A stretch of 64,000 nucleotides of DNA from Dendrobates tinctorius (lineage: Eukaryota). The notes beneath the pieces are model-generated. The model worked only from the letters and a program-made list of their open reading frames with translations, was not told the origin of the DNA and searched no databases. Numbering within the stretch: position 1 is the first letter of the stretch; each line of letters opens with the position of its first letter. Below, piece by piece: positions 8,926-53,303 of the stretch. The position numbers and the translations under genes were made by a program. The DNA lies in assembly GCF_039654945.1 (NCBI RefSeq), contig NW_027361802.1, forward strand, positions 17,236,001 through 17,300,000, in the 5' to 3' direction.

Positions 8926-10530
8926 CAGTGGGGCAAAAAAGTATTTAGTCAGTCAGCAATAGTGCAAGTTCCACCACTTAAAAAGATGAGAGGCGTCTGT
9001 AATTTACATCATAGGTAGACCTCAACTATGGGAGACAAACTGAGAAAAAAAAATCCAGAAAATCACATTGTCTGTTTTTTTTTCATTTTATTTGCATATT
9101 ATGGTGGAAAATAAGTATTTGGTCAGAAACAAGCAATCAAGATTTCTGGCTCTCACAGACCTGTAACTTCTTCTTTAAGAGTCTCCTCTTTCCTCCACTC
9201 ATTACCTGTAGTAATGGCACCTGTTTAAACTTGTTATCACTATAAAAAGACACCTGTGCACACCCTCAAACAGTCTGACTCCAAACTCCACTATGGTGAA
9301 GACCAAAGAGCTGTCAAAGGACACCAGAAACAAAATTGTAGCCCTGCACCAGGCTGGGAAGACTGAATCTGCAATAGCCAACCAGCTTGGAGTGAAGAAA
9401 TCAACTGTGGGAGCAATAATTAGAAAATGGAAGACATACAAGACCACTGATAATCTCCCTCGATCTGGTGCTCCACGCAAAATCCCACCCCGTGGGGTCA
9501 GAATGATCACAAGAACGGTGAGCAAAAATCCCAGAACCACGCGGGGGGACCTAGTGAATGAACTGCAGAGAGCTGGGACCAATGTAACAAGGCCTACCAT
9601 AAGTAACACACTACGCCACCATGGACTCAGATCCTGCAGTGCCAGACGTGTCCCACTGCTTAAGCCTGTACATGTCCGGGCCCGTCTGAAGTTTGCTAGA
9701 GAGCATTTGGATGATCCAGAGGAGTTTTGGGAGAATGTCCTATGGTCTGATGAAACCAAACTGGAACTGTTTGGTAGAAACACAACTTGTCGTGTTTGGA
9801 GGAAAAAGAATACTGAGTTGCATCCATCAAACACCATACCTACTGTAAAGCATGGTGGTGGAAACATCATGCTTTGGGGCTGTTTCTCTGCAAAGGGGCC
9901 AGGACGACTGATCCGGGTACATGAAAGAATGAATGGGGCCATGTATCGTGAGATTTTGAGTGCAAACCTCCTTCCATCAGCAAGGGCATTGAAGATGAAA
10001 CGTGGCTGGGTCTTTCAACATGACAATGATCCAAAGCACACCGCCAGGGCAACGAAGGAGTGGCTTCGTAAGAAGCATTTCAAGGTCCTGGAGTGGCCTA
10101 GCCAGTCTCCAGATCTCAACCCCATAGAAAACCTTTGGAGGGAGTTGAAAGTCCGTGTTGCCAAGCGAAAAGCCAAAAACATCACTGCTCTAGAGGAGAT
10201 CTGCATGGAGGAATGGGCCAACATACCAACAACAGTGTGTGGCAACCTTGTGAAGACTTACAGAAAACGTTTGACCTCTGTCATTGCCAACAAAGGATAT
10301 ATCACAAAGTATTGAGATGAAATTTTGTTTCTGACCAAATACTTATTTTCCACCATAATATGCAAATAAAATGGAAAAAAAACAGACAATGTGATTTTCT
10401 GGATTTTTTTTTCTCAGTTTGTCTCCCATAGTTGAGGTCTACCTATGATGTAAATTACAGACGCCTCTCATCTTTTTAAGTGGTGGAACTTGCACTATTG
10501 CTGACTGACTAAATACTTTTTTGCCCCACG
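8926..10530 (+). mobile_element. Tc1-family DNA transposon with ~210-bp inverted repeats (copy A)
   Basis: TA TSD (8924-8925, 10531-10532); long TIR beginning CAGTGGGGCAAAAAAGTATTTAG; right tip reads CCCCACG rather than CCCCACTG. Confidence 0.97.
9293..10315 (+). CDS. Tc1 transposase, intact DD34E, 340 aa
   Basis: Paired-like HTH; GAPRK linker; [14 protein letters not shown] and [11 protein letters not shown], with 34 residues between the second D and the E. Confidence 0.95.
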
Positions 10531-12019
10531 TATATATCCTCTGCATCCAAACACTTTATTGACATACATAGAGGCAATCTCTCATTCCTCAAGGTTTTTT
10601 GTTTTGAAAAAATTATTAGATCGGCTCGAGGTGGTGATATGCGGAGACACTCTGGATTTTTAATTTGGGTACTCATTCCCCATTGGGGTTGAACCTGAGA
10701 AATGAAATAGCTTATCATTATAGAGACCTTAAATATTTTATTAAGTTTTCACATTATCCTATTTATTTTTTATTTATCTGTTTTCGTTTATTATATCAAT
10801 TTGGATATTAACCCCTTAGTGACAAAGCCAAATTTTAAAAATCTGACCAGTGTCACTTTATGTGGTAATAACTCTGGAACGCTTTGACAAAATGCATTTG
10901 ATTTGGAGATTGTTTTTTCGTGACACATTATACTTTATGGTCATTGTAAATTTAGGTTCACAAGTTTTGTGTTTATTTATAAAAATATCAGAAATTTGAC
11001 AAAAATGTAAAAAAATTAGCAATTTTCAAACTTTGAAAGATTATCCCTTTAATTCAGATAGTCATACCATAGCAAAACTTTAATAAATAATATTTCCCAC
11101 ATGTCTGCTCTACATCAGCACCATTTGAAAAATGTTATTTTATTTTGTTAGCATTTTAGGAGGTTGAAACTTGTAGCAGTAATTTTTCATTTTTTCATGG
11201 AAATTTACAAAATAATTTTTTTTAGGGACCTCTCCAGGTTTGAAGTGACTTTGGGGGTCGTATATAATGGAAAAATCCCAAAAATGATAGCATTCTAAAA
11301 ACAGCACCCCTTGACTTATTGAAAACTACTGCCAGGTAGTTTATTAACCCTTCCGGTGCTTTTCAGGAATTAATACAAAATGTCATGATAGGAATGAAAA
11401 AGTTGATTTTTACCACCTAAATGTTGCTGACTTTTGAACAGGTCAGTGTAGCCTGCAGACTCTAAGGATGCTATTTACTCATGAATTGCCATGGCAAACA
11501 TCAGGACCACACAATCATGATCTCAGAGTGCCAAATAGGATAAAGAGGGAGAAGCCACACTCTTTAAAACATTTATTTGATAAAGTCACTATTGACAGCA
11601 GCACTTAAGGGGTTAAACAGATATGGACGGTGACAACACTGATCGTGGCTGATGCAGCTAGTTGTCAGCTATAGTGCACAGCTGACAGAAGCTGGATGGT
11701 CACCTGTAGGAGGATGATATTCTCTTATGTCTCAGGTCGGTTAAAAGACGTAGAAAAATGAGGATGAATAAACTCATGGAGATCAACATCCAACACTGCG
11801 GAGACACCATCACATGTTTCTCAACGCGGTGATTCTAGAGCAATGCCCCCATCCCTTATGGGAAATATGTAAAAACACGCAAAACACAAGCCGCGGAGAC
11901 ACCATTACATGTTTCTCAACGCAAGCAATGACAAGCCAGGTCTTTCCCCGGGAAGGAACAACCACGGGAAGGGCAGTCTCCAATGAAGGAAACCACCTAT
12001 GCCAAAACATGGTATCATC

Positions 12020-12058
12020 CACAGACAGCTGTTTCGGGGTATTGCCCCTCATCAGTGA
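12020..12058 (-). ncRNA. Type I minimal hammerhead ribozyme (intact core)
   Basis: Minus strand reads CA-CTGATGA-GGGG-CAATA-CCCC-GAAA-CAGCT-GTC-TG: canonical core, 4-bp helix II, palindromic ACAGCTGT helix III, GUC cleavage triplet. Confidence 0.9.
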
Positions 12059-12458
12059 GGAGTAGGAAACTGGCCAGTAGGAGCAATGCCTAGTAGAAGA
12101 CTGTGAAAAAGGATGAATGAACTCATGGAGATCAACATCCAACACTGCAGAGACACCATCACATGTTACTCAACACAGTGATCTAGAGCAATGCCCCCAT
12201 CCCTCATAGGAAATGTGAAAAACATGCAAAACACAAGCCGCGGAGACACCATCACAAGTTTCTCAACGCAAGCAATTGTGTTTTGCATGTTTTCACATAT
12301 TTCCCATAAGGGATGGGGGCATTGCTCTAGAATCACTGCGTTGAGAAACATGTGATGGTGTCTCCGCAGTGTTGGATGTTGATCTCCATGAGTTCATTCA
12401 TCCTCATTTTTCACAGTCTTCTACTAGGCATTGCTCCTACTGGCCAGTTTCCTACTCG

Positions 12459-12497
12459 ACACTGATGAGGAGCAATAACCCGAAACAGCTGTCTGTG
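12459..12497 (+). ncRNA. Type I minimal hammerhead ribozyme (helix II damaged)
   Basis: CTGATGA-GGAGCAATAACCC-GAAACAGCTGTC; core intact, helix II mismatched relative to the 12020 copy. Confidence 0.8.
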
Positions 12498-12829
12498 GAT
12501 GGATACCATGTTTTGGCATAGGTGGTTTCCTTCATTGGAGACTGCCCTTCCCGTGGTTGTTCCCAGGGAAAAACCTGGCTAGTCATTGCTTGCGTTGAGA
12601 AACATGTTATGGTGTCTCCGCGGCTTGTGTTTTGCAAGTTAAAAGACGTATTGACGGTCATTAAGGTGTTAACATTCATTCTTTTCTTTTTTGTATTGCT
12701 TTTCCTTCCCTCATTTTATATATTTTTTTTTCCTTCACAGTGTGTTAGCTCTAATTTGGTAATTATGTCTCATGTGTGTTGTTTAATTGCACCTTTGTGT
12801 TTAATATTGGTGTTTGGTCACTTTCAAGT

Positions 12830-12869: not shown

Positions 12870-14683
12870 GCTCCTGTTCCTGTCCAATATTTTTTAATTG
12901 TTTTTTGATGAAATAAAGATTACTCTAAAAATGTTACTAGAAGCTGGAACATTTCTTCCTTTTCCTGTAAATGTGCAACAAGCCTTATTGCAATCTTTGG
13001 CAGCCAGAATGAAAAAAATCAAAACATGTGAAGAATTGTTTTTATTTATTTTTTACGCCATTCATTGTGCGTTAGAAGTGATTAGGCAACTTTATTCTTT
13101 GGGTCAGTGAGATTAGAGAGATACCAAATTTATAATCGGGTATTTATGTTTGGCTGCTGTCACTAAAAGTTGCTTTTTAGTGCGAAAACTAGTTTTTGCA
13201 TCACATTTTGAAAGCTCTAATTTTTCCATATTTCAGCAGACAGAGTCATTTTATGACTAAAGATGACCGAACATTTCAATGTTCCGTTCAGATTACATTT
13301 GCTGAATTTGCAATATTCGACGATTAATTCATTGAATATTCGCCGAATATAACCGAACGCCATTCACCTCTATGGGAGGCAAAAACAAACGCATGCACAA
13401 CACCTTAAAACTGCCCCAAATGCTGCCAAAGCACATCAAATGAGGAACAGACACCAGGAAAATGGCCTTAATTCACCCACAGTACAGATTTTAGCATGGC
13501 ACTGCAGCAATCAGCCAGGCATGAGGTATCGGAGTCTTGGACAGCATTTACAGCTTTCAATTGAATGTCACAGTAAAACTAGGTGGGTGAGGGATCGGTG
13601 TAGGCCCCCTTTGCTGGGAGCCTTGATAACTCATTCAACACTTTTACCTGCTTTCAGTGTCATCAATTGCAATAAAGTAAAATTAGAATTGCAGGGACCG
13701 ACACCTTTCTCACTACAGACAACTCACCAGATGGAGACTGTAACGGGCAAAGGGGTGGAATCACTTTTCCGTTTCCCTCTGAAAGCCTGGAAGCGGTGTA
13801 ACTAGGTGGCCTACAAATCCCTACTTGCACAAGTGGCAGCAGGCGAAAACCGTGAAACAAAGAGGTACAAAGAGGTGGCACAAGGTGCTACTCCATGGCT
13901 GACCTACTTAGTGTAGCAGCTGACCCCCTACAGTGGGTAAGCTGCTAAGGCCCAAAGGAGGGGTAAAATATGCAGCCAGGAACAGTAGGGACTCTGGATT
14001 CACAGGTGCAGCTGGGACCGGCTGAGGAACAGAAAATCACTGGCAGGTGCAGGTTGGACCAGGTGTTAGACAAGTGGGTGCTGGCAGGTGCGATCTGGAC
14101 CAGCTGATAGACAAAAGAGCGCAAACAGGTACGAGCAGACTGGCAAAGGCAGGTAAGAGCAGAAGGGTCCAGGGTAGACAAGCATACAGATGGATCTAGG
14201 GATCCTGACAACTAGCAAGCATGCAAGGCAAACTAACAATGTGGCTCAGGCACCTCTATATTGGAGAAGCCTTTAATAGAAGGTGTCGCCCAGCTATACA
14301 CTGGGAGTACCTTATGTTGATGCATGAGGACCCTTTAATAGTGAGGGAGTGCACGAGTGTGCCCTCTAAGCATAGTTTCTAGTCCTACAACTAAACCTTG
14401 GAGGAAACCGACACATAGGGGGTGAGATGAGGAGGTGGTGTGTGAGGGGGAGACAGTGAATGTAATGTCTGTTAGGAATGTGGAGATCCAACAAAGGGCC
14501 TAGTCTGTAATGTCAACAGAACAGAAAATCTGTAGTAAGAGAGAATGGTCCACTGTGTCAAAGACAGGTCTAGGAGGAAGAGGAGGACAAACTCGCGTCA
14601 TTTTCATTTGGCGGTTAGTTGGTCATTGGTGACTTTAGTCAGGGCAGTGTCAGTGGAATTGTGCAGTCTGAAGTCAGATTGTA

Positions 14684-16097
14684 TTACGGCTATGGAGTAT
14701 TAGGAAAAAAATATGAGACGCTTAGCATATAACTTGGGCAAATTATATCTGCCCATCAACCAACATCAATGTGGCCTCAAAGTCTGATGGGTACCTACAC
14801 TGTGTGAATACCTTTCTAAGGCTAATGTCTGAACTCCTGAGTGAATGTGGACACCTCTGTCAGCAATGCCTGCATTTATGGGTAAGTAGGAACCTGCTGT
14901 AGTTAAAATCACCACCTGGTGGAGGGCGGAGAGCTCAGTCAGTAAGCTAATATACAAAAGACAAAAAACTGACTGGCACATCCAGACTAGTGTGAATAGG
15001 TGCATACCAGGAGGAGCTACCTCCATATACAATATACAAAATAAGGTTGCACTCTTTTATGCTAAAGCATGTCAATGTGGAATATATGAAATTTGAATAG
15101 CAATACGGCTATGGAGTATTAGAAAAAAATATGAGACGCTTAGCATATAACTTGGCCAAATTATTTTTGCGCATCAACCAACGTCAAGGTGGCCTCAAAG
15201 TCTGATGGGTACCTACACTGTGTGAATACCTCTCTAAGGCTGATGTCTGAATTCCTGGGTGAATGTGAACACCTCTGTCAGCAATGCTTGCATTTATGGG
15301 TAAGTAGGGACCTGCTGTGGTTAAAATCACCACCTGGTAGAGGGCGGAGTGCTCTGTGAGTAAACTAATATACAAAAGACAAAAAACTGACACAGGTATT
15401 CACACAGTGTAGGTACCCATCAGACTTTGAGGCCTCCTTGATGTTGGTTAATGGGCAGATATAATTTGGCCAAGTTATATGTTAAGCGTCTCATATTTTT
15501 TTCCTATTACTTCATAGCCGTATTGCTATTCAAATTTCATATAATCCACATTGACATGCTTTAGCATGGCAGAGTGCAACCTTATTTTGTATATTGTATA
15601 TTGAGGTAGCTCCTCCTGGTATGCACCTATTCACACTAGTCTGGATGTGCCAGTCAGTTTTTTGTCTTTTGTATATTAGCTTACTGACCGAGCACTCCGC
15701 CCTCCACCAGGTGGTGATTTTAACTACAGCAGGTCCCTACTTACCCATAAATGCAGGAATTGCTGACTGCTGACAGAAGTGTCCACATTCATCCAGGAAT
15801 TCAGACATCAGCTTTAGAGAGGAATTCACACAGTGTAGGTACCCATCAGACTTTGAGGCCACCTTGATGTTGGTTGATGGGCAGATATAATTTGGCCAAG
15901 TTATATGCTAAGCGTCTCATGTATTTTTTTCCTAATACTCCATAGCCGTATTGCCATTCAAATTTCATATATTCCACATTGACATGCTTTAGCATGATAG
16001 AGTGTAACCTTATTTTGTATATTGTATATTGAGGTAGCTCCTCCTTGTATGCACCTATTCACACTAGTTTGGATGTGTCAGTCAATTCGTTGTCTTT
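14684..16097. mobile_element. Retrozyme-like non-coding element, ~419-bp tandem unit, inverted arms, no canonical hammerhead
   Basis: 15-bp TSD TGAAGTCAGATTGTA (14669-14683, 16098-16112); unit repeats at 14685 and 15104; inversion ~15392; about 1.7 units per arm; inserted in an L2 fragment. Confidence 0.85.
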
Positions 16098-16314
16098 TGA
16101 AGTCAGATTGTACGCGGTCAAAGAGGGAGCAAGAGGAGAAGTGGGAGGAGAATTCAAAATGGACATGTTGTTGCAGTAGTTTGGTGGCATAGGGGAGAAA
16201 TGGTATGGGGCGATAGGTAAACACAGAGGATGGGTCAAGGGTAGGCTTTTTGAGGATGGATGTGATTGAAGTATCCAAGCAAGAAAAGTTTTTCCAGCAA
16301 GCGTTGAAGGAACA

Positions 16315-16500
16315 GTAGTAGATGTTTTTAGAAAAAAACTCAATATTTAATGAATCAAAAAAAAGTTACATGTATGGACAAAAATTTATCTCCTCACCCC
16401 TCTAAAACAAGGGGGTGAGGGGTTAACCTTTTTGCCTATACATGTAACTTTTTTGTATTCTTTAAATATTGAAGAGTTTTTTTCTAAAAACATCTACTAC
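16315..16500. repeat. ~185-bp imperfect palindrome (fold-back)
   Basis: GTAGTAGATGTTTTTAGAAAAAAACTC... mirrored by ...GAGTTTTTTTCTAAAAACATCTACTAC; centre near 16405. Confidence 0.8.
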
Positions 16501-16524: not shown

Positions 16525-18514
16525 GTTTATACTGAGTACACCGATACCTCATATGTGGTCATAAACCACTGATTGGGCGCACAGCAGAGCCCGGAAGGGA
16601 AGGAGCACCATTTGACTTTTTGAATGGAAAATTAGCTACAATCGTTAGCGGACACTCTTTCGCGTTTGGAGAGCCCCTGTGTGCCTAAACAGTGAAACCC
16701 CCCCACAAGTCACACCATTTTGGAAGCTAGACCCCTTAAGGAACTTATCTAGATGTGTGGTGAGCACTTTGAACCCCCAAGTGCTTCACAGAAGTTTATA
16801 AACGCAGAGCCATGCAATTAAAAAAATCATTTTTTTCCTCAAAAATGATTTTTTAGCCCGCTATTTTTATTTTTATAAATGGTAACAGGATAAATTGCTC
16901 CCCAAAAGCTGTTGTCCAGTTTGTCCTGAGTACGCTAGTATCCCATATGTGGGGGAACCATTGTTTGGGCACATGTCGAGGCTCGGAATGGAAATAGTGA
17001 CGTTTTGAAATGCAGACTTTGATGGAATGGTCTGCGGGCGTTGTTACGTTTGCAGAGCCCCTGATGTGCCTAAACAGTAGAAACCCCCCATAAGTGACCC
17101 CATTTTGGAAACTAGACCTCCCAAGGAGCTTATGTAGATGTCTGGTGAGCACTTTGAACCCCCAAGTGCTTCACAGAAGTTTATAACGCAGAGCTGTCAA
17201 AAAATAAAAAATCATTTTCCACAAAAATATTTTTTTTGCCCCCAATTTTTTATTTTCCCAAGGGTAACTGAAGAAATTAGACCCCCAAAGTTGTTGTGCA
17301 ATATTTCCTGAGCACGCTGATACCCCATATGTTGGGGTAAGCCACTGTTTGGGCACACGTCGGGGCTTGGAAGGGAGGGAGCACCGTTTGACTTTTTGAA
17401 CGCAAAATTGGCTGGAATCAATGGTGGCGCCATGTCGCGTTTGGAGACCTCCTGATGTGCCTAAACAGTGGAAACCCCTCAATTCTCAATCCAACCTTAA
17501 CCTCAACACACCCTAACCACAACCCTAACCCCAACACATCCTTAACCCTAATCCCAACCCTAACCATAACCCTAACCCCAACACACCCCTAACCCTAATC
17601 CCAAACCTAACCATAACCCTAACCACAAGCCAACCCTAATCCCAACCCTAACCCCAACACACCCCTTACCCTAATTTTAACCATCATTCAATCCCAACCC
17701 TAATTCCAACCCTAACCCTAATTCCAACCCTCACCCTAATTCCTACCCTAACCCTAATTCTAACCCTAACCCTAATTCTAACACTAACCCTAAAAGAAAA
17801 ATAAAAATAGAAAAAAAAATTTATTTTATTATTTGTCCCTACCTATGGAGGTGATTTACTATTTTTTTATTTTGATCGCTATGTTAGGATCTTTCACAGT
17901 GATCAAAATGAATGAATGGAATCTGCCATTTGGCAGATTCGACGTGCACACTGTGCATGCGACTGTCATTTTGGAGGATGGCGGTGCCCATGATCCGGGA
18001 CGACAGGACACCGGGAGGCACAGCGGGACTCGGAGGGTACCAGGGGGGAGGGGGGTGATCGTAAGGTGGGGGGAGTGGAGGGAAGGGGAGGGGGAGCAGA
18101 TGATGATGGCGGTGGCAGATTGCCGCTGTCACTCGGTGGCGGGGGCCGATCACCTCATCAGTCGTGGGGGGGTCGGTTTGGTGTCTCCAACCATGCCCGA
18201 TGCTATTTCAGCATCGGCCATTGATGGATTGCAATATTTCATCAAATTTCATTGATGAAATATTACTATCACTCTGATTGGCTGTTTCACTTTCAACAGC
18301 CAATCAGAGCGATCGTAGCCACAGGGGGCAAAGCCACCCCCCCTGGGGTGAAGCACAAAGAGTCCTGTATCTGCGGGTTGGGTGACCTTTCAGTGACCCC
18401 GGTAACCCAACCCGCAGGAATGCTATTTATGCTATGATGCCAACGTAGGCGCCATGGGTCATATTGGCCCAGATTTTCATGATGCCTACGTTGGTGTCAT
18501 GGGTCGGGAAGGGG
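16525..18514. mobile_element. Non-autonomous piggyBac-like element (left end not found) with internal ~385-bp repeats
   Basis: Right end GGGTCGGGAAGGGG followed by TTAA (18515-18518); block GAGCACTTTGAACCCCCAAGTGCTTCACAGAAG repeated at ~16762 and ~17147. Confidence 0.6.
17490..17793. repeat. Degenerate (CCCTAA)n-like hexamer tract inside the transposon
   Basis: CCCTAA interleaved with CCCCAA, TCCCAA, TTCCAA and CCATAA variants. Confidence 0.85.
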
Positions 18515-20294: not shown

Positions 20295-20775
20295 GTTAAT
20301 GATCTACAGTGCGTGTGAAAGGTTTATTTATAATGGAATCAATTACGGGCAAATAGCTCAGCAGCGCATGCGCCGTCATTACAACCCGGAAGTCACAAGG
20401 CGATACACATCATGTGACTAAATACTTCCGGGTATATTGAATGTCAGTCACTGTGAGACGCCGTTTCCATGTGAACCAGCGGCGTATTCAATAGCACGTG
20501 CATATAGCACAATGCCCATTATTTCTAATGAGGTTGATCACGGGCAGAGAACTTAACGGCGCATGCGTAGCCAATACAGCACGGAAGTCACAATGCGACA
20601 GGCGTCATGTGCAAAAGGACCCGTCGCCATGCGAACCACCGGTGATTAGATAACGCATGCGCACAGTTCAATGCCAATGACAACATCAGACTAATTGCAA
20701 TAAAAACGAGGGAAATAATATGTGGAAAATGGATATAACTCTATCAAATGTGAGGCATAATAAATCATACCCCAT

Positions 20776-20824
<49 letters not shown>

Positions 20825-21259
20825 GCCAAATATAAACAGTGCTGTAGTAATATAGAAAGTGTATATAATTAGTACATGTGACAACATATATACATTAATT
20901 ATAATATATAAATACACAATAATAGTCACATATATATATAACATAATAATAATTAGTTCCATAATTGCATGGAATTACATTAATTATGAATACAAAAGTG
21001 CACCCAGTGGGAAACAAGATAAATATGAAGTGCCACAAAAAATAAAAAAATATAATAAATTAAAAAAATAAATAATAATTACTAAATATATATATATATA
21101 TATATATATCTAAATAAGCCGAAATATAAACAGATAGAGGTTCTTCTTGCTTCCTCTTTCCACCAGAATAAGGATGAATATGATGGTCCTCACATAACCG
21201 CATCAGTCACACCATTGAAAAAAAAAAAAAAAATTTTTTAAATGCATGGAAAAAAGACT

Positions 21260-23353
21260 TTATAAAAAAGGAATAAACAAAACACTCTCATTAAGACCCA
21301 ATGGAGACACCGTACCTAGTGTCCATATCCATTGGGTCTCTAGTTGAGCAAGCAATTTACTGACATTTCCTCCTCTATCACCCCTGCACACCATATCAAT
21401 GCCAGATACCTTCAATAATGAAGAATCACAATTGTGATGTATTTTGAAATGTCTGGGCTGGGTTTTGAGTGAGGAAATGTCCTCAACATCAACAGCTGCC
21501 TTTATGCCTAATACATGCTCCCACACCCTCACCTTGAGCTGGCGAGTGGTAAGGCCAACGTAGATGAGGGGGCAGGGGCATGTGGCACAATAAATGACAG
21601 CTGTAGATGAGCAAGTTATGGATTTCTTGATGTCAAAAACACGAACATTATCAGAACTCATAAATGTACGTGCCCTGACAATATTAGGGCAGGCTATACA
21701 CTGTCCACACGGTTTACAACCCGTGGTTTGTTTGTGTTGTGCAATAAAGTTATTAGCTGGTTCCTGAACATAGTGACTTTTCACTAAACCATCAACTAAA
21801 TTAGGTGATCTCCGAAATGTAATATTCGGATGATCTCCAATATATTTTGAAAGAATGGGATCTGCCTTCAAGATTGGCCAAAATTTGTCCAAATTAAATC
21901 TAAGTTGTTCCTTTTGGCCATTGAAGCTAGTAATAAATCTAACTACTTCCTTAGAATTTGATTTATTTTTATTGTTATCATAAAGTACACTATGTCGAGA
22001 TAAATGTCTTGCTCTATTAAATGCCCTTTTTATGGAGTGTCGGCTATAACCTCGCTCCATAAATCTTTCTTTCAATAACTCTGCCTGTCTTAAAAAATCC
22101 ATTTCTGTGGAACAAATGTATCTTATGTGCAAAAATTGCCCAATTGGAATAGAGTTGATTAAATTACGAGGGTGAGAAGATGATGCATGAAGGAGAGAGT
22201 TAACTGCTGTTTGTTTCCTAAACAAATCAGTTTGTAAACAATCATTGCAATCCCTCATCACATGGACATCCAGAATATCAATGACCTCACAATTGAACTG
22301 AAAAGTAAGAGGCACATTGATGTCATTCAAATTTAGCATTCCGATAAATTTAGATAGCTTGTCGGTGGAATCCTGCCAAATAAAAAACACATCATCGATG
22401 TAGCGTGTCCAAAATGGAACACGCTCAATCGACTCATAATTACCAGATAGAAAGAGGTCCCTCTCCCACAGACCCAGGAACAGGTTGGCATAACATGGGG
22501 CAAAAGAAGCACCCATCACTGTTCCCTTGGTCTGTAGGAAGAAGGACCCCTTAAAAATAAAAAAATTGTGGCATAAAGCAAATTCTAATAAATTAATAAA
22601 AAACATAATAAATGAACGTGAGTAGGATGAATGTTGTAAAAAATATAATACAGCAGCGATTCCATCGGCATGTTTAATACTAGTATATAAGGACTCCACG
22701 TCACATGTAACTAACATGGAGTCCTTATCAATATGCATACCATCAATCTTTTTAAGAAAATCACTGGTGTCCCTGGTGTAAGATGGGAGGGATGAAACAA
22801 AAGGCTGCAAAATGAAATCGATGTATTTGTTAACATTTTCCAAGAAATGACCTCTCCCTGATATAATTGGTCTACCCGGTGGTATATCAATGTTTTTATG
22901 TATCTTGGGCAGCAGATAAAGGGTGGGAATGGTAGGCTCTTGGACTTGTAGGGCCAAAAAGAGATCATTTGTAATTATGCCATCATCTTTGGCATCCTGT
23001 AAGAATAATTTTAGCTCCACTTGAAATTTTGACAGAGGGTTGAATGTTAACATCTTATAACATTCAGGATTATTGAACTGACGGTATGCCTCTGTTTTAT
23101 ACATGTCTTTTGGCCATACCATTATATTCCCACCCTTATCTGCTTGCTTGTATACAATATCTTGTAGACCAGACAATCTCTTAAGGCTTGTTCTTTCTTT
23201 AAAGCTCAAATTATCCATATGTATTTTAGGTGAAATGCTATTTAATTCCCTACTAACTGTTTTGACAAATACCTCGACACTTGGACAAGTTGATAATGAA
23301 AGAAATTTGGTAGATGGTTTCTTAATAAACTGTGGAACCTCACCTTCCTTCAT
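21260..23353 (-). CDS. PLE-2 reverse transcriptase/GIY-YIG endonuclease (697 aa open; one in-frame stop ~23369 separates the N-terminal part)
   Basis: ADKGGN, LPKIHK, GRPIISG, DVESLYT, GTVMGASFAP, RYIDD, CKPCGQCIAC, VIYCATCPCPLIYVGLT; the Cys motif between RT and EN is of the Neptune type. Confidence 0.9.
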   Translation of the reverse strand: MKEGEVPQFIKKPSTKFLSLSTCPSVEVFVKTVSRELNSISPKIHMDNLSFKERTSLKRLSGLQDIVYKQADKGGNIMVWPKDMYKTEAYRQFNNPECYKMLTFNPLSKFQVELKLFLQDAKDDGIITNDLFLALQVQEPTIPTLYLLPKIHKNIDIPPGRPIISGRGHFLENVNKYIDFILQPFVSSLPSYTRDTSDFLKKIDGMHIDKDSMLVTCDVESLYTSIKHADGIAAVLYFLQHSSYSRSFIMFFINLLEFALCHNFFIFKGSFFLQTKGTVMGASFAPCYANLFLGLWERDLFLSGNYESIERVPFWTRYIDDVFFIWQDSTDKLSKFIGMLNLNDINVPLTFQFNCEVIDILDVHVMRDCNDCLQTDLFRKQTAVNSLLHASSSHPRNLINSIPIGQFLHIRYICSTEMDFLRQAELLKERFMERGYSRHSIKRAFNRARHLSRHSVLYDNNKNKSNSKEVVRFITSFNGQKEQLRFNLDKFWPILKADPILSKYIGDHPNITFRRSPNLVDGLVKSHYVQEPANNFIAQHKQTTGCKPCGQCIACPNIVRARTFMSSDNVRVFDIKKSITCSSTAVIYCATCPCPLIYVGLTTRQLKVRVWEHVLGIKAAVDVEDISSLKTQPRHFKIHHNCDSSLLKVSGIDMVCRGDRGGNVSKLLAQLETQWIWTLGTVSPLGLNESVLFIPFL

Positions 23354-23878
23354 GTTGTGTTCTCTTGACTACTGCTCCAAGTCAGCTAATGCCTCCTGTT
23401 CCGCCTCTGTTGGAAAAGAATCGAAGGTTTGTTTATCGTGAAAAATGCGTTTAAATAGTAACTTCCTAGCAAAAAGATGTAAATCTTTGACTGCCCTAAA
23501 ACAGTCAAATTTTGCCATGGGGCAAAACATTAATCCTTTACTTAAAATGCTAATTTCAATAGAAGAAAAGGTATGAGTGCTTAAATGAATTACCCTTAAC
23601 TGATTTGAATTTGATTCTGGAGAATAATTTCTTTTGTTAGGAAGAAAACGCAAATTCCTTTTTCTCTTAGGAGTAACCATGGAAGACATAGAGGCGGAAG
23701 AGGGCATTGTGAAGAGGGAAATAATGGGCATTGTGCTATATGCACATGCTATTGAATACGCCGCTGGTTCACATGGAAGCGGCATCTCACAGTGACTGAC
23801 ATTCAATATACCCGGAAGTATTTAGTCACATGATGTGTATCGCCTTGTGACTTCCGGGTTGTAATGACGGCGCATGCA

Positions 23879-26800
23879 CTGGATGGAAAATTGTGTTTTT
23901 ACTGCGGAGATCCTGGACATTGGAAAAAAGACTGCCCCTCCTGTCCTCTGACTAACAAGCGGCTGAGTCTGGGTGATAATCGTGGAGGTCACCCAGACTC
24001 TCAGGTACCTTTTTCTTCTTTTTCAAAGATACTGCTAAAGGTGGAACTTGGTGTCGAGAACGGCTTTTTCCATACTTCGGCTTTTGTAGACTGTGGGTCA
24101 TCCCTGAACCTGATTGACTCTAAGCTGGTGGCTCGCTGTAGATTAGGGACAGATAGGTTGGGGACTCCCTTAAAAATTGTGGCTATTGACTCTACACCTC
24201 TCACTAAGGATGGTCTCCATTTCATTTCTAAAGAATTCACCCTCAGGGTGGGGGCCCTACACCAGGAGTGCATGTCATGCTTTGCTTTGGATAACTTCCC
24301 TGCTGGCCTAGTGTTAGGGTTTCCCTGGTTGCAACGGCATAACCCGGTTATTGACTAGGGGTCCCGGGATATTGTTAAATGGGGACCTGATTGTTCTGAA
24401 AATTGTCTTGCTACTGTGTCTATGTCATCCGTCAGTCTGGAGGGTATTCCAGAGTACCTGAAGGATTTTGAGGATGTGTTCTCTGAAAAGGAGCCTGAGG
24501 TTCTACCACCACACTGCCCATTCGATTGTGCCGTGGATCTCTCTGGCCCTGAGCGGGCTGCTATGAAGGAGTATATCTCTGAGAGCCTCCGTAAAGGGCA
24601 TATACGACCATCTGTCTCTCCCGTGGCAGCGGGGCTCTTTTCTGTGAAAAAAAAGGATGGTGGTTTACGCCCATGCCCCGATTTTCGAGAACTGAATAAA
24701 ATAACCATAAGAAACGCTTACCCTGTCCCACTGATACCTGATTTGTACAATCAAATGTCGGGGGCCAGGTAGTTCTCTAAGTTGGACCTCGGGGGAGCAT
24801 ACAATCTCATCCGTATGCGGGAGGGGGATGAATGGAAAACTGCGTTTCTCACCTCTGAGGGTCTGTTTGAAAATTTGGTTATGCCCATTGGTTTGACTAC
24901 CGCACCAGTGGTATTCCAGAATTTCATTAACCATGTTTTTTCTGATTTTATTGGACGCTTAGTAGTTGTTTATCTTCACGATATACTCATATATTCTTCT
25001 GATAGACAAAGTCATATGGGTCATTTCATGCGGTTCTCCAGAGGCTCAGGGAGAACTCACTCTTTGCCAAATTGGAGAAATGTTCATTTTTTACTCAAGA
25101 ATTGTCCTTTCTAGGGGTCATCCTGTTCGCTGAAGGGTTTCGTATGGACCCTAGGAAGGTACAGGCCATTGTGGATTGGGTGCAACCCAGAGATCTCAAG
25201 GGTCTTCAGCGATTTCTGGGTTTTGCCAATTATTATAGAAAATTCATCAAGGGGTTCTCTCAAGTGGTCAAACCCCTCACTGATCTCACCTAAAGGGGGG
25301 CGGATCTCAAAAACTGGTCAGCTCCAGCTGTGGCGGCGTTTTCCTTGTTATAAGAACGTTTCATGACTGCTCCGATACTGGTGCAACCTGACTTGTCTAA
25401 ACCATTCATCATAGAAGTGGATGTCTCTGAGGTGGGAATGGGGGCTGTGCTGTCCCAGGGGCCCACCACATTAACTAACTTAACCCTGTGCCTTCTTTTC
25501 TAAAAAAATTTCCTCTGCTGAAAGGAATTATGATGTGGGTAACCGAGAGTTGTTGGCCATTAAATTGGCTTTTGAAGAATGGAGGCATTTTTTGGAGGGA
25601 GCTGTCCATCGTATCACTGTCATTACAGATCACAAGAACCTGTCTTACATCGAATCCGCCAAACGTTTGACTCCGAGTCAGGCAAGGTGGTCACTTTTTT
25701 TTTCCCAATTTCAGTTTTCCATCACTTTCAGACCAGGTTCCAAGAATGTGAAGGCGGATGCCTTGTCTCGCAGCCTAGATCCAGTATCGCCTCCTGAGCC
25801 TCCTTCCTCCATTCTTCAGCGCGGGGTGGTGGTGGCTGTGGTGTCCCCAAGATTGGAGCAGGAGATTCGTGAGGCCCAATCTCTTGCTCCTCCGTCCATA
25901 CCTGAAAATAAGCTCTTTGTGCCTGTCCAGTATCGGTTAAGGGTGCTTCGGGAGTTCCACGACTCAGCTCTGAGTGGGCATCCTTGAGTCTCGGCCACTC
26001 GTAAAGCCATCACTAGGCTGTTCTGGTGGCCCTCGTTGACTTCTGACGTCACTGGTTTTGTGTCCTCCTGTGAAACTTGTGCCCGCGCTAAAACCTCCCA
26101 CAACCGACCGGCCGGGGAGTTGGTGCCACTGCCAATTCCGGATAGACCGTGGACTCACCTGTCCATGGATTTTATCACCGATCTCCCACCCTCTAATGGC
26201 AAAACCGTGATCTGGGTAGTTGTGGCTAGGTTCAGTAAACAAGCACATTTTGTACCCTTAACAGGCCTTCCTAATGCTGAGACTCTATCTAAGCTATTCA
26301 TTGAGCATGTGATTCGGTTGCTTGGTGTGCCTGTCAGTGTTGTGTCTGATAGAGGGGTGCAATTCGTGGCAAAATTCTGGAGAGCTTTTTGTAAAAGGCT
26401 GGGCATCAGTCTGACCTTTTCATCGGCCTACCATCCCGAGACCAATGGTCAGACTGAAAGGACCAATCAGTCTTTGGAGCAGATCCTGCGGTGTCTTGTC
26501 ACATCCAAGTTAATTAAATTCACCGCACACTCAAACAGACTTTATGCAAATAGGTGTTCATTTTATTACATGTGGGAGCCAAACAGGAATATAGCACACA
26601 GTGAATGCGATATAAATAAAAGACATTTCGGCTCAGCCCGCAGGAGCGCTTCCTTCTCTCAGCACACATCAGCCATTTATCTTGGTATTTCCTCTTGAGA
26701 GATTCTCCTTTCCTTCTGCACCCTATACAAACCTCCAATATTGGAATAAGCAATAATATGATAAAGGCTCGAGCTGAGCCGAAACGTCTTTTATTTATAT

Positions 26801-27706
26801 CGCTTCCACTGTGTGCTATATTCCTGTTTGGCTCCCACATGTAATAAAATGAACACCTATTTGCATAAAGTCTGTTTGAGTGTGCGGTGAATTTAATTAA
26901 CTTGTAATTAGGACCTACTGGTCCGTTGCACCTGCACCTCGTCTATATTTGACTAGAGTGCACGCTAACTACCCAGTTTTCTTGTCACATCCAGACAGGA
27001 TGATTGGTGCTCTGTGATACCTATAGCGGAATTCGCCTTCAATAATCGTGTCAATCAGTCTACTGGTACTTCTCCTTTCTTCTGCAACTATGGGTTTCAC
27101 CCTCAATTTGGTGAATTCTCCAGACTAGATTCGGAGTGTCCAGGGGCTGATTCGGCCTTTTTGCGGTTGGAGGAGGTTTGGAGGGAGGTTCAGAGAAACA
27201 TTGGGGAGGCTCCGGGCAAATCTAAATTTTTTGCGGATAAACGATGCTCGGTGGGGCCGACTTATCAGGTGGGGGATAAGGTATGGTTATCCACCAAAAA
27301 CATAAGGCTGAGAATTCCCTCTGCTAAGTTGGGTCCCAAGTTTATTGATCCGTATGAGATTTTAGAGGTGATTAATCCTGTGGCCTTTCGCCTGCGCTTG
27401 CCTCCGTCATTACGGATTCCTAATGTGTTCCAGAAAGCGCTTCTGAAGCCGTCGGTGCCTTCCTCTGATGAGTCTCCCTCGCACCCGCCGCCTGTTATGG
27501 TAGATGGTCAGACCGAGTATGAGGTGGAACAGGTGGTGGATTCTCGCATGCTCCGTCGTTCACTTCAGTACTTGGTCCACTGGAAAGTATACGGTCCTGA
27601 GGATTGGTCATGGGTGCCAGCGCGTTCGGTCAATGCCGATCGGTTGGTCCGGGCCTTTCACGCTTGTCATCCAGGGAAGCCTGGGGGTCCAATGGCCCCC
27701 CATTGA
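23879..27706 (+). pseudogene. Gypsy gag-end/pol: CCHC knuckle, protease, RT, RNase H, integrase, chromodomain; disrupted
   Basis: CFYCGDPGHWKKDC; FVDCGS; YLHD (YLDD mutated); FLGFANYY; TDHKNL; MDFITDLP, SDRGVQF, GQTER; chromodomain YEVEQVVDSR...YLVHW. Confidence 0.92.
26508..26979. mobile_element. Short PLE-type non-autonomous insert (inverted arms, hammerhead-like motif) inside Gypsy integrase
   Basis: 14-bp TSD TCTTGTCACATCCA (26494-26507, 26980-26993); 26508-26640 is the reverse complement of ~26770-26903; TGATAAA-GGCTC-GAGCT-GAGCC-GAAACGTC at ~26759-26788. Confidence 0.85.
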
Positions 27707-33529: not shown

Positions 33530-35845
33530 CTGCTATTTTGGATCTAATCCTTATAAACAGGGAGGAAATGGTTGAGGAGGTAAAAGTGGCTGGGACCCTA
33601 GGAGGTAGCGACCATGCTATTTTAGAATTTTGGATAACTAGAGGCGGAAGACCTGTGAAGACTCAGACTTCAAGGTTAGATTTCAGAAAGGCAGATTTTA
33701 AGGGATTCAGAAAGAGAATTGGAGGGATCCAATGGCTGGATATCCTTAAAGACAAAAATGTCCAGGAAGGATGGGAAATCTTGAAAAATGAAATTCTCAA
33801 AGCACAGTTGTTAACAATTCCGAAAAGAGGGAAGAATAGGAAGCAGTTAAGGAAACCAGGATGGATGAACACAGAACTTAAGCACATGCTAAAAAGGAAG
33901 AAAAAAATGTTTATAAAATGGAAAGAGGGAGGCATATCTAAAGAAGAATATAATGCTGTCTGCAGAACCTGCAGGGCACAAATCAGATTAGCTAAAGCTG
34001 AAAATGAATTGAGGCTTGCAAGAGATGTCAAAAGCAATAATAAAGGATTTTGGGGATATGTCAAAAGTAAAAGAAAAGTCAAAGATGCCATAGGATTTTT
34101 ACAGGATGAAAATGATGAAATGGTAAGACAGGATGTTGAGAAGGCTGAACTTTTAAATTCCTATTTTGCATCTGTTTTCTCTCAGAAAGGAAATGTAACA
34201 TCAACTGTTATTCACTGTCCTATTAAGGGAATAGAAGAATCCAGGATATCTATAAACAGAAAGATAGTGAGGAAACACTTAGCTAGCCTAAATGAATTCA
34301 AGTCTCCAGGTCCAGATGAATTACACCCCAGAGTACTGAAGGAGATAGCAGAAGAAATTTTTGAACCCCTCTCTATAATCTTTGAAAATTCTTGGAGAAC
34401 AGGAGAAGTGCCAGAAGACTGGAGAAGAGCAAATGTTGTTCCTATCTTCAAAAAGGGGAAGAAGGTGGACCCAGGTAACTATAGGCCGGTGAGTCTGACT
34501 TCTATACCAGGAAAGATCTTTGAACAAATTATTAAACAACATGTATGTCAATACCTGGATAAGAATGAAGTGATTAAACAGAGTCAGCATGGGTTTGTAA
34601 CTAATAAGTCATGTCAGACTAACTTAATTTCCTTCTATGACGGTATCACTGATTGGGTGGATCAAGGAAATGCTGTAGATATAGTATATCTTGACTTCAG
34701 CAAAGCATTTGACAAAGTCTCTCATACAATCCTTATTGAAAAAATGATTAAGTATGGAATGGACAAGGCAACTGTTAGGTGGATTCATAACTGGCTTAGT
34801 GATCGGACCCAAAGAGTGGTCGTAAATGGCTGCACATCCAGTTGGAAGAATGTCTCAAGTGGGGTACCACAGGGCTCTGTCCTGGGCCCTGTATTGTTCA
34901 ACATCTTTATCAACGATTTAGATGAAGGAATTGAGGGTAAACTGATTAAATTTGCTGATGACACAAAGCTAGGAGGGATAGCTAATACTAGAGAAGAGAG
35001 AGAGAGGATTCAAAAAGATTTAAATAAACTGGAGAAGTGGGCAGCAACTAACAGAATGGTTTTTAACAGGGAGAAATGCAAAGTACTACATCTGGGCAAT
35101 AAAAATGGAAAAAGCATATATAGAATGGGAGGAATAGGGCTAAGTGACAGCACATGTGAAAAAGACTTGGGTATACTAATAGATCACAGACTGAATATGA
35201 GTCAACAGTGTGATGCAGCAGCAAAAAAGGCAAATGCAATTCTAGGATGTATTAACAGAAGCATACAGTCTAGATCACGTGAAGTCATTATTTCCCTCTA
35301 CTCCTCTTTGGTCAGACCTCATCTGGAATATTGTGTCCAGTTTTGGGCACCACATTTTAAAAAAGACATCAACAAACTGGAGCAAGTTCAGAAAAGAGCG
35401 ACCAGAATGGTGACCGGTCTGCAAACCCTGTCTTATGAGGAAAGGTTGCAGGATTTGGGAATGTTTAGTTTGCAAAAGCGAAGACTGAGAGGAGACTTAA
35501 TAGCTGTCTACAAATATCTAAAGGGCTGTCACATTGTAGAAGGATCAACTTTATTCTCATTTGCACAAGGAAAGACTAGAAGCAATGGGATGAAACTGAA
35601 TGGGAGGAGACACAGATTAGATATTAGAAAAAACTTTTTGACAGTTAGAGTGATCAATGAGTGGAACAGGCTGCCACGAGAAGTGGTGAGTTCTCCTTCA
35701 ATGGAAGTCTTCAAACAGAGGCTGGACAGACATCTGACTGGGATGATTTAGCGAATCCTGCTTTGAGCAGGGGGTTGGACCAGATGGCCCAGGAGGTCCC
35801 TTCCAACTCTACGATTCTATGATTCTATGATTCTATGATTCTATG
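33530..35845 (+). mobile_element. 5'-truncated CR1 LINE, young
   Basis: Uninterrupted ORF2; 3' UTR GGTCCCTTCCAAC then (ATTCTATG)4 at 35814-35845; flanks rejoin to the L2-like sequence seen uninterrupted at 18720-18815. Confidence 0.95.
33538..35751 (+). CDS. CR1 ORF2 (end of APE + RT), 5'-truncated, 737 aa open
   Basis: LDLIL...SDH (APE C-terminus), [47 protein letters not shown]. Confidence 0.92.
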   Translation: MDLILINREEMVEEVKVAGTLGGSDHAILEFWITRGGRPVKTQTSRLDFRKADFKGFRKRIGGIQWLDILKDKNVQEGWEILKNEILKAQLLTIPKRGKNRKQLRKPGWMNTELKHMLKRKKKMFIKWKEGGISKEEYNAVCRTCRAQIRLAKAENELRLARDVKSNNKGFWGYVKSKRKVKDAIGFLQDENDEMVRQDVEKAELLNSYFASVFSQKGNVTSTVIHCPIKGIEESRISINRKIVRKHLASLNEFKSPGPDELHPRVLKEIAEEIFEPLSIIFENSWRTGEVPEDWRRANVVPIFKKGKKVDPGNYRPVSLTSIPGKIFEQIIKQHVCQYLDKNEVIKQSQHGFVTNKSCQTNLISFYDGITDWVDQGNAVDIVYLDFSKAFDKVSHTILIEKMIKYGMDKATVRWIHNWLSDRTQRVVVNGCTSSWKNVSSGVPQGSVLGPVLFNIFINDLDEGIEGKLIKFADDTKLGGIANTREERERIQKDLNKLEKWAATNRMVFNREKCKVLHLGNKNGKSIYRMGGIGLSDSTCEKDLGILIDHRLNMSQQCDAAAKKANAILGCINRSIQSRSREVIISLYSSLVRPHLEYCVQFWAPHFKKDINKLEQVQKRATRMVTGLQTLSYEERLQDLGMFSLQKRRLRGDLIAVYKYLKGCHIVEGSTLFSFAQGKTRSNGMKLNGRRHRLDIRKNFLTVRVINEWNRLPREVVSSPSMEVFKQRLDRHLTGMI

Positions 35846-52950: not shown

Positions 52951-53303
52951 TTTTCTGGCTTGTGCCCCAGCCAGATTAGTATTACCCAATTTTTTTGGAG
53001 CCTCATCTTTTGCATTGTAGGTTACCTGCCTGCATTGTAATAGCTCCAAAAAGTTGGTGATACTATCAGTTTCAATTCTTTGTTCACATACTTTGAGTTT
53101 GTTTCCAACAAAGAAACCACAAAAAAAGTTCACCAAACACTACATTTGGAACTTGTGTAGGCCACATCAGCTCCTATTAAAGTGTAGTCCACACACACAC
53201 TTCATAAAATTAGTGTTTCTTGTACCTGTAACCAGCTGTTCAGGAATAAGCACACTAAGGCCCCCCTTTGTACTTTTCTGCCTATCTTAAGCAGTCTGGC
53301 AAG

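What the first reader, a model, noticed from the sequence alone, without database searches (positions are those of the whole stretch)
14684..16097. Retrozyme-like 419-bp element with no hammerhead: candidate unrecognised self-cleaving or structured RNA
Seen in sequence: it has every architectural mark of the neighbouring HHR retrozyme (non-coding tandem unit of several hundred bp, inverted arms, 15-bp TSD). It also has AGAGTGC and TGCACC motifs like those in the 26508 insert. By the arm-polarity rule the sense strand is the plus strand of the right arm, and I find no CUGANGA...GAAA core there. Instead a ~110-nt block (15810-15918, present wholly or largely in four copies) has overlapping pairing options: CCCATCA 15842-48 with TGATGGG 15875-81; TTGGTT 15870-75 with GGCCAA 15894-99; AGTGTA 15832-37 with TATGCT 15904-09; AGGT 15837-40 with ACCT 15861-64. 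These suggest a pseudoknotted fold. The block also holds the palindrome TTGGCCAA, analogous to the dimerisation palindromes of minimal hammerheads. By eye it does not match hammerhead, HDV, twister, pistol, hatchet or hairpin consensus. Inference: tandem retro-mobilised RNAs need unit-length processing, so this may be a PLE-parasitic circular-RNA family using a new or highly divergent ribozyme. Caveat: the opposite strand has the partial look-alikes CTGATGG...GAATAC and AACGTCAAG.
Basis: partly seen in the sequence, partly recalled or inferred. Interest (0 to 1): 0.85.

Follow-up and report, generated by a model that had tools for sequence, protein, structure and literature searches.

The report
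Ribozyme-less Penelope-type tandem retroelement insertion
This is a real 1.4-kb jumping-gene insertion built from tandem and flipped copies of a ~420-base non-coding unit, most likely copied in by Penelope-type retrotransposon machinery; nothing measured here supports a hidden new self-cutting RNA in it.

Summary
The architecture is real. A perfect 15-bp target duplication brackets 14684-16097. The insert has two head-to-head arms, each about 1.7 tandem copies of a 418-426-nt non-coding unit. Contigs from four public runs show the host repeat without the insert.

There is no hammerhead on either strand. A core-motif search that finds both hammerheads of the neighbouring element finds none here, and Rfam gives no ribozyme at E<=10.

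The proposed new ribozyme has no support:
- The 110-nt block and the whole unit fold no better than shuffled sequence (z -0.9 to +0.9). The neighbouring hammerhead unit gives z -3.1.
- Among the four copies there are no compensatory changes, and 5 of 6 variable paired sites break their pair.

Published work shows that Penelope-like elements insert as partial tandems with a flipped 5'-truncated copy, extend both target strands, start reverse transcription inside the RNA, and still insert when the hammerhead is mutated.

Best reading: a non-autonomous, ribozyme-less passenger of Penelope-type machinery, belonging to an abundant repeat family. This scan already reported a comparable 542-bp family elsewhere in this genome (s1-389096). 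The finding is ordinary, with modest interest.

The parts
14669..14683 (.). Left copy of the 15-bp target-site duplication, TGAAGTCAGATTGTA
   Evidence: Exact repeat D8. Pattern search and chance expectation. Empty-site joints in four runs.
14684..14954 (-). Left arm, outer partial unit (5' 271 nt of the unit, antisense on +). Its sense 3' end (..CCATAGCCGTAA) abuts the left target duplication.
   Evidence: Alignment A1 row Lb; blastn.
14955..15372 (-). Left arm, full unit (418 nt)
   Evidence: Alignment A1 row La; nhmmer E 6.5e-157.
15373..15391 (-). Left arm inner tip: the last 19 nt of a unit (GTCAG..GTCTTTTG in sense). The junction with the right arm is at 15391|15392, uncertain by up to 2 nt.
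   Evidence: Alignment A1 row L_tip; sequence.
15392..15671 (+). Right arm, 5'-truncated unit (3' 280 nt of the unit, sense)
   Evidence: Alignment A1 row Ra.
15672..16097 (+). Right arm, full unit (426 nt, with a private 7-nt duplication). It ends ..GTCTTTTG against the right target duplication. This is the inferred start site of first-strand reverse transcription.
   Evidence: Alignment A1 row Rb; sequence.
16098..16112 (.). Right copy of the 15-bp target-site duplication
15810..15918 (+). It is part of the unit and shows no structural signal.
   Evidence: Fold z-scores -0.9 to +0.4 in four copies and both strands. Pair counts. RNAalifold covariation term +1.06.
15653..15688 (+). Short stem (GTCAGT 15653-58 with ACTGAC 15683-88) closing a 24-nt U-rich loop. 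The loop contains the unit position at which the insertion's 3' end lies (15671|15672). Candidate internal RT-initiation hairpin; inferred, not significant on its own.
   Evidence: Predicted in the sense fold of two copies. Sense z is only -0.1 and -0.7. One copy carries a disrupting change.

Best explanation
The insert is one retrotransposition product of a non-autonomous, non-coding tandem-repeat RNA, mobilised in trans by the reverse transcriptase/GIY-YIG endonuclease of a Penelope-like element (PLE). No ribozyme is involved.

Proposed steps:
1. A multi-unit transcript of a genomic array of the ~420-nt unit is bound by the PLE protein.
2. The target, which lies inside another abundant repeat, is nicked on both strands 15 bp apart.
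3. First-strand synthesis starts inside the RNA, just after ..GUCUUUUG in a U-rich loop, and copies about 1.7 units. This gives the right arm.
4. The other target strand primes a second cDNA at a different place in the repeat (..CCAUAGCCGUAA). This gives the flipped left arm.
5. The two 5' ends are joined in the middle, and gap repair creates the 15-bp duplication.

Under this reading the tandem layout exists because initiation is internal. Only a longer-than-unit RNA carries a whole unit upstream of a start site, so unit-length cleavage is not required.

Shown here: the insertion, its anatomy, the absence of a hammerhead and of any structural signal, the multi-copy family, and a PLE-type ORF nearby. 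Inferred: the PLE as the mobiliser, the order of events, and the role of the hairpin.
For: - Perfect 15-bp target duplication exactly at the ends of the repeated block.
- Empty-site joints in contigs of four runs from three coded organisms.
- Both arms have their sense 3' ends outward and their 5' ends at the centre.
- The outermost termini are not inverted copies of each other, so this is not a DNA transposon.
- There is no poly(A) tail.
- The neighbouring element 11754-12637 has the same layout and a 13-bp target duplication. It carries a genuine minimal type I hammerhead of the Penelope kind. Its 3' end also falls after a UUUUG(CA).
- ORF 21260-23353(-) is uninterrupted for 697 aa. It has an RT domain and a C-terminal ..IYVGLT..R..EH motif. 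Its nearest Atlas clusters carry RVT_1 + GIY-YIG + HTH_animal in chordates, score 0.98.
- The family is multi-copy in organisms A, B and C.
- Literature: PLE insertions are partial tandems, often with an adjacent inverted 5'-truncated copy, and non-autonomous Chlamys elements give head-to-tail multicopies (PMC8557442).
- Literature: a purified PLE protein cleaves and extends both strands, initiates internally in a stem-loop, and does not need the hammerhead (PMC11167929).
- Literature: vertebrate retrozymes are argued to be non-autonomous PLE derivatives (bioRxiv 10.64898/2026.07.22.740005).
Against: - No sequence similarity was found between the unit and the PLE in the window, or any other element there. 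The mobilising partner is therefore unidentified.
- The 30-40-bp 'tail' typical of many PLE insertions is not seen.
- The published RT start site is in an AC-rich loop, whereas here it is U-rich.
- The candidate hairpin is not statistically distinguishable from chance.
- Only one locus and four copies could be studied, because no further copies could be fetched.
- The vertebrate PLE clades described so far carry hammerheads in their pLTRs, so a hammerhead-less passenger is not the textbook case.
Confidence: 0.7

Rival explanations
1. The unit encodes an unrecognised or highly divergent self-cleaving ribozyme, in the 15810-15918 block or elsewhere. The ribozyme would process tandem transcripts to unit-length, circularisable RNA, making this a true retrozyme with a new catalytic motif.
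For: - The architecture is the same as hammerhead retrozymes.
- The block is well conserved among the four copies, 92% mean column identity.
- A 7-bp stem plus alternative pairings exist.
- Rfam models are insensitive to minimal motifs: the genuine neighbouring hammerhead reaches only 15.7 bits, E 4.9.
- Novel ribozymes cannot be excluded by computation.
Against: - The block is no more conserved than the rest of the unit (pairwise identity 92.6-94.6% overall).
- The block and unit fold like shuffled sequence on both strands, whereas the hammerhead neighbour gives z -3.07.
- MFE structures differ between copies.
- There are 0 compensatory changes, and 5 of 6 variable paired sites break the pair. 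The RNAalifold covariation term is positive.
- Family contig depth is lower over the block than around the unit junction (a weak measure).
- The premise that processing is needed is contradicted by PMC11167929 and PMC8557442.
Confidence: 0.04
2. The ~420-nt unit is not a free-standing element. It would be the pLTR/UTR portion of a longer autonomous PLE, whose hammerhead and ORF lie elsewhere in the full element. This locus would then be a heavily 5'-truncated tandem/inverted insertion of that PLE.
For: - PLE insertions are mostly 5'-truncated and often consist only of terminal repeats (PMC8557442).
- In organism C, contigs match only about 136 nt around the unit junction and then run on into unlike sequence (records 21 and 29). 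This is what a shared terminal module would look like.
Against: - Each arm reads through a complete unit straight into the next unit with no ORF sequence between. The template was therefore a tandem of the short unit itself.
- There is no similarity to the PLE present in the window.
- There is no hammerhead anywhere in the unit, whereas vertebrate PLE pLTRs carry one (PMC4209133 title and abstract).
Confidence: 0.12
3. This is a LINE-mediated retrocopy of a satellite or tandem-repeat transcript. The flipped arm would be made by L1-style twin priming, with no PLE involved.
For: - A 15-bp target duplication and a 5' inversion with 3' ends outward are also the marks of twin priming in L1-type insertions (established knowledge).
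- There is microhomology between the target and the unit at the left junction (repeat D7).
- LINE-type RT ORFs are present in the window.
Against: - There is no poly(A) or microsatellite tail at the 3' end.
- The identical layout occurs in the neighbour, which carries a Penelope-type minimal hammerhead.
- Other elements of this genome with this layout were noted by the scan.
- The arm positions do not fit a simple contiguous twin-priming geometry. If the arms overlapped on one RNA they should be near-identical, but they are 93-96% alike in every register.
Confidence: 0.12
4. This is a DNA-level foldback (FB-like) transposon, or a palindromic rearrangement of a satellite.
For: It has long inverted arms made of tandem subrepeats, with a target duplication.
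Against: - The two outermost termini are different unit positions, 147 columns apart, so there are no terminal inverted repeats for a transposase.
- The inverted-repeat registers are not symmetric about the element's centre.
- 15 bp is long for a DNA-transposon target duplication (established knowledge).
Confidence: 0.02

Closest known systems
Animal non-LTR retrozymes (type I hammerhead tandem repeats; Cervera & de la Pena 2020, PMC7229834; Li, Clavereau & Pollet 2026 preprint)
   Same: - Non-coding tandem units of a few hundred nt.
- Low GC.
- Long target duplications.
- Dispersed multi-copy family in an amphibian-type genome.
- Same insertion layout as the hammerhead element 3 kb upstream.
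   Different: - No hammerhead on either strand.
- The unit RNA shows no excess self-pairing (z about 0, against -3.1 for the neighbour).
- No evidence of circular RNA.
Penelope-like element insertion signature (pLTR partial tandem plus adjacent inverted 5'-truncated copy; PMC8557442, PMC11167929)
   Same: - Partial tandem.
- Head-to-head flipped copy.
- Target duplication.
- No poly(A).
- A 3' end at an internal, loop-located position of the repeat.
   Different: - No RT/EN ORF.
- No recognisable tail extension.
- No detectable similarity to the PLE in the window.
Non-autonomous Chlamys elements such as MRC1 of Chlamydomonas (PMC8557442)
   Same: Hammerhead-less, non-coding passengers of PLE machinery that form pLTRs and multicopy head-to-tail insertions.
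   Different: - The hosts are green algae, and those elements share 3' ends with known autonomous partners. Here the partner is unknown and the host is a vertebrate-type genome.
- Sequence relation was not tested.
L1 twin-priming 5' inversions
   Same: A flipped 5' segment with both 3' ends outward, a 15-bp target duplication, and microhomology at a junction.
   Different: No poly(A) tail. The template is tandem-repeat RNA. The companion elements carry Penelope-type hammerheads.

Membership tests
Animal non-LTR retrozyme | A type I hammerhead ribozyme in each repeat unit | tested here: not met
   The core-motif search, including versions with one core position relaxed, finds nothing in 14684-16097 on either strand, while the strict core motif finds both neighbour hammerheads. 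There is no Rfam hammerhead match at E<=10.
Animal non-LTR retrozyme | Non-coding tandem units of about 170-400+ nt with a target duplication | tested here: met
   Units of 418-426 nt, longest ORF 88 aa, 15-bp target duplication.
Animal non-LTR retrozyme | Unit-length circular RNA in vivo | not testable with these tools
   Only assembled contigs were available, and their RNA label is a guess. Contigs cannot show ends or circles.
Animal non-LTR retrozyme | Compact, highly self-paired unit RNA | tested here: not met
   Unit z +0.89, -0.32 and +0.79, against -3.07 for the neighbour.
PLE-mobilised non-autonomous element | Partial tandem plus adjacent inverted 5'-truncated copy, bracketed by one target duplication | tested here: met
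   Empty sites.
PLE-mobilised non-autonomous element | Sequence shared with the terminus of an autonomous PLE | tested here: inconclusive
   There is no similarity to the only PLE in the window. The rest of the genome could not be searched.
PLE-mobilised non-autonomous element | A 30-40-bp tail extension at one end | tested here: not met
   Both ends are plain unit sequence up to the target duplication. The tail is optional in published descriptions.
Known self-cleaving ribozyme families in Rfam 15 (hammerhead, HDV-like, twister, twister-sister, pistol, hatchet, hairpin, VS, hovlinc) | A covariance-model match | tested here: not met
   No match at gathering score in the window. In 14500-16300 at E<=10 the only hits are a long-hairpin microRNA model matching the inverted arms and a weak bacterial sRNA match (Prevotella-2, E 9.4), neither a ribozyme. 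Caveat: the models also miss the neighbour's minimal hammerhead.
Foldback / TIR DNA transposon | The two outermost termini are inverted copies of each other | tested here: not met
   The left end is unit column 281 and the right end is column 428.

The most novel reading that the evidence does not exclude
The unit, or its 110-nt block, is a new class of self-cleaving or protein-assisted ribozyme. It would replace the hammerhead in a Penelope-dependent circular-RNA family of frogs.
Probability: 0.03. Interest if true: 0.85.

Novelty: new member of a known kind. Interest (0 to 1): 0.2.

Why it matters
If the reading holds, the element is a natural case of a hammerhead-less passenger inserted with the full Penelope signature, right next to a hammerhead-bearing one. 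That supports the in vitro finding that the ribozyme is dispensable for insertion. It also suggests that the tandem organisation follows from internal initiation of reverse transcription, not from rolling-circle or self-cleavage steps.

The finding is also useful for repeat annotation. Such elements are easily misread as satellites or foldback transposons. It is not a new ribozyme candidate on present evidence.

Tried and rejected
- **Hammerhead on either strand.** Rejected by motif search with a positive control and by Rfam. It sits inside a GGTA..TACC hairpin, so it cannot form a hammerhead core.
- **Structured block or pseudoknot.** No energy signal, stems at chance level, no covariation.
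- **Getting more family copies for a real covariation test.** Two metagenome scans and one viral scan with conserved 22-mers found nothing. A protein search with the 88-aa ORF, meant to reach called ORFs on frog contigs, found nothing. A findings search by sequence was blank.
- **Relation to the neighbouring hammerhead unit, the 26508 insert or the nearby PLE.** None found by blastn or nhmmer.
- **tRNA-derived SINE.** No tRNA-like gene.
- **Snap-back hairpin cDNA.** Rejected because the arm registers are not symmetric about the centre and the arms start at different unit phases.
- **Rolling-circle template versus diverged genomic array.** Undecidable. The four copies are 92.6-94.6% alike in a star-like pattern. 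This fits either identical units that decayed about 3% each or already diverged source units. An intact 30 bp of target duplication is about 40% likely under the first option (my arithmetic).

Full report
**What is there.**
- The stretch 14684-16097 is bracketed by an exact 15-bp direct repeat, TGAAGTCAGATTGTA, at 14669-14683 and 16098-16112. Only 0.26 matches with up to two mismatches are expected by chance in the whole window.
- Between the repeats lie two arms of opposite orientation: 14684-15391 and 15392-16097.
- Aligned in one register (alignment A1), the arms resolve into four copies of a 418-426-nt unit. The right arm holds a 5'-truncated copy (15392-15671) followed by a full copy (15672-16097). 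The left arm, read on the minus strand, holds a 19-nt tip (15391-15373), a full copy (15372-14955) and a 271-nt partial copy (14954-14684).
- With the plus strand of the right arm taken as sense, both arms have their 3' ends against the target duplications and their 5' ends meeting at the centre.
- The two outer ends are different positions of the unit: column 428 (..GTCTTTTG) on the right and column 281 (..CCATAGCCGTAA) on the left. The element therefore has no terminal inverted repeats.
- The unit is non-coding (longest ORF 88 aa), is not tRNA-derived, and has no relative elsewhere in the window.

**The insertion is real.**
- Contigs from four public runs, covering three coded organisms, were laid on 14500-16300.
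- In all four runs, contigs join 14668/14669 directly to 16098/16099, skipping 1429 nt, with 14-15 letters fitting both sides. This is the flanking sequence with a single copy of the 15-mer and no insert.
- The flanks themselves belong to a much more abundant repeat, so these are empty sites in paralogous copies.
- Thousands of contigs match the insert at 80-99% identity. The unit therefore belongs to a multi-copy family shared by closely related species.
- All runs were assembled contigs, and the 'RNA' label of two of them is a guess. Nothing can be said about expression, RNA ends or circles.

**No known ribozyme.**
- Rfam 15 gives no match at gathering score anywhere in the window.
- In 14500-16300 at E<=10, the only hits are a long-hairpin microRNA model matching the inverted arms and a weak bacterial sRNA match (Prevotella-2, E 9.4); neither is a ribozyme.
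- Rfam is not sensitive to minimal Penelope-type hammerheads. The genuine one in the neighbour 11754-12637 scores only 15.7 bits.
- I therefore searched directly for the conserved core. CUGANGA followed by GAAA finds both hammerhead copies of the neighbour and nothing in this element. Versions with one core position relaxed also find nothing inside it.

**No sign of a new structured RNA.**
- The 109-nt block 15810-15918 and its three sister copies fold no better than dinucleotide shuffles on either strand (z +0.43 to -0.91). Their minimum-energy structures differ from copy to copy.
- Whole units give z +0.89, -0.32 and +0.79.
- A sliding 100-nt scan of the sense strand never goes below z -1.1.
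- As a control, the neighbouring hammerhead unit gives z -3.07, with 0 of 100 shuffles as stable.
However, a perfect stem of 7 bp or more arises in 13% of shuffles of the block, and the number of shorter stems is average.
- On the four copies there is no pair with changes on both sides. Of six paired positions that vary, five lose the pair and one goes G-C to G-U.
- RNAalifold's own consensus has a positive (penalising) covariation term.
- Four copies 93% alike give little power, so this is absence of support and not proof of absence.
- The block is no better conserved than the rest of the unit. Family contigs pile up more around the unit junction than over the block (a weak measure).

**What it most likely is.**
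- The layout is the published signature of Penelope-like element insertions: partial tandems, often with an inverted 5'-truncated copy next to them (PMC8557442).
- A purified Anolis PLE protein nicks and extends both target strands. It starts reverse transcription at internal sites in a stem-loop of the RNA rather than at its 3' end. It inserts equally well when its hammerhead is inactivated, and unprocessed RNA is the main template (PMC11167929).
- Hammerhead-less PLE clades exist, and non-autonomous Chlamys elements produce head-to-tail multicopies.
- Vertebrate retrozymes have been argued to be non-autonomous PLE derivatives (preprint 10.64898/2026.07.22.740005).
- Within the window, the hammerhead-bearing neighbour has exactly the same head-to-head layout with a 13-bp target duplication.
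- An uninterrupted 697-aa ORF at 21260-23353(-) has an RT domain and a GIY-YIG-like C-terminus. Its closest Atlas clusters carry RVT_1 plus GIY-YIG in chordates.
- I therefore read the element as a ribozyme-less, non-autonomous passenger of PLE machinery.

**Inferred mechanism.**
- The insertion's 3' end (15671|15672 in unit terms) falls in the 24-nt U-rich loop of a short stem, GTCAGT/ACTGAC.
- The neighbour's 3' end also follows UUUUG(CA) in a U-rich stretch.
- The left arm's inner tip begins at the 5' strand of that same stem.
- If initiation is internal, only a longer-than-unit transcript can pass on a full unit. This would explain the tandem organisation without any self-cleavage.
- The hairpin is not statistically significant on its own (sense z -0.1 and -0.7), and one copy carries a disrupting change.

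**Open points.**
- The mobilising partner is not identified. The nearby PLE shares no detectable sequence with the unit.
- A LINE-type twin-priming origin cannot be excluded. The lack of a poly(A) tail and the company of Penelope-type hammerhead elements with the same layout argue against it.
- The four copies are 92.6-94.6% alike in all pairings. This does not distinguish a rolling-circle-like template of identical units that later decayed from a transcript of an already diverged array.
- I could not obtain further family members for covariation analysis.

**Relation to earlier notes of this scan.**
- A follow-up report on another piece of this genome (s1-389096) describes a ribozyme-less Penelope-type tandem insertion with 542-bp units and a 15-bp target duplication. 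This kind of element has therefore been seen before in this genome.
- The neighbouring hammerhead element was noted as s1-383064, and I confirmed it.
I did not verify it.

**Verdict.** The ribozyme interpretation is unsupported and its premise is contradicted by published work. This is a new member of a known kind, of low to modest interest.

Noticed in passing
window 11754-12637: A hammerhead retrozyme-like insertion with a 13-bp target duplication (GTTAAAAGACGTA) and the same head-to-head arm layout. It holds two copies of a minimal type I hammerhead with a palindromic helix III loop (AGCU). Its unit RNA folds with z -3.07. Rfam models barely see the motif (15.7 bits, E 4.9).
   Followed up: partly
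window 21260-23353 (-), element about 20500-23900: [quoted passage not shown] Its closest Atlas clusters are chordate RT+GIY-YIG proteins (0.98). It is probably an intact or recent Penelope-like element. AT microsatellites lie in its 3' region, and inverted matching termini lie near 20520 and 23745.
   Followed up: partly
window 26509-26980: A 472-bp non-coding insert with a 13-bp target duplication (CTTGTCACATCCA) that interrupts an integrase-like reading frame of an LTR-type element. It has two inverted arms plus a unique 75-nt 3' tail ending ..CCCAGTTTT. The core-motif search finds no full hammerhead.
   Followed up: partly
window 16097, 12637 and 26980: The 3' ends of three unrelated inserts with this layout all fall at or just after a U4 tract: ..GTCTTTTG, ..GTGTTTTGCA and ..CCCAGTTTT. 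This may reflect a shared preference for the reverse-transcription start site.
   Followed up: no
window 14500-14683 and 16098-16268: The host sequence of the insertion is itself a very abundant repeat in all four runs laid. Its contig word depth is far higher than for the insert in most bins.
   Followed up: no
window 17492-17793: An interstitial degenerate telomere-like array, (CCCTAA)n-derived, with 12-76-nt higher-order periods.
   Followed up: no
window 9293-10315 (+), 38373-39401 (-), 53268-56621 (+), 33538-35751 (+), 44521-45567 (+): Two Tc1/Sleeping-Beauty-type transposase ORFs, one hAT transposase ORF with a BED finger, and two strong RVT_1 ORFs. The window is a dense patchwork of transposable elements.
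   Followed up: no
window 16314-16500 and 58341-58422: Near-perfect hairpin palindromes, MITE-like. The second one gives symmetric weak microRNA-model matches on both strands.
   Followed up: no
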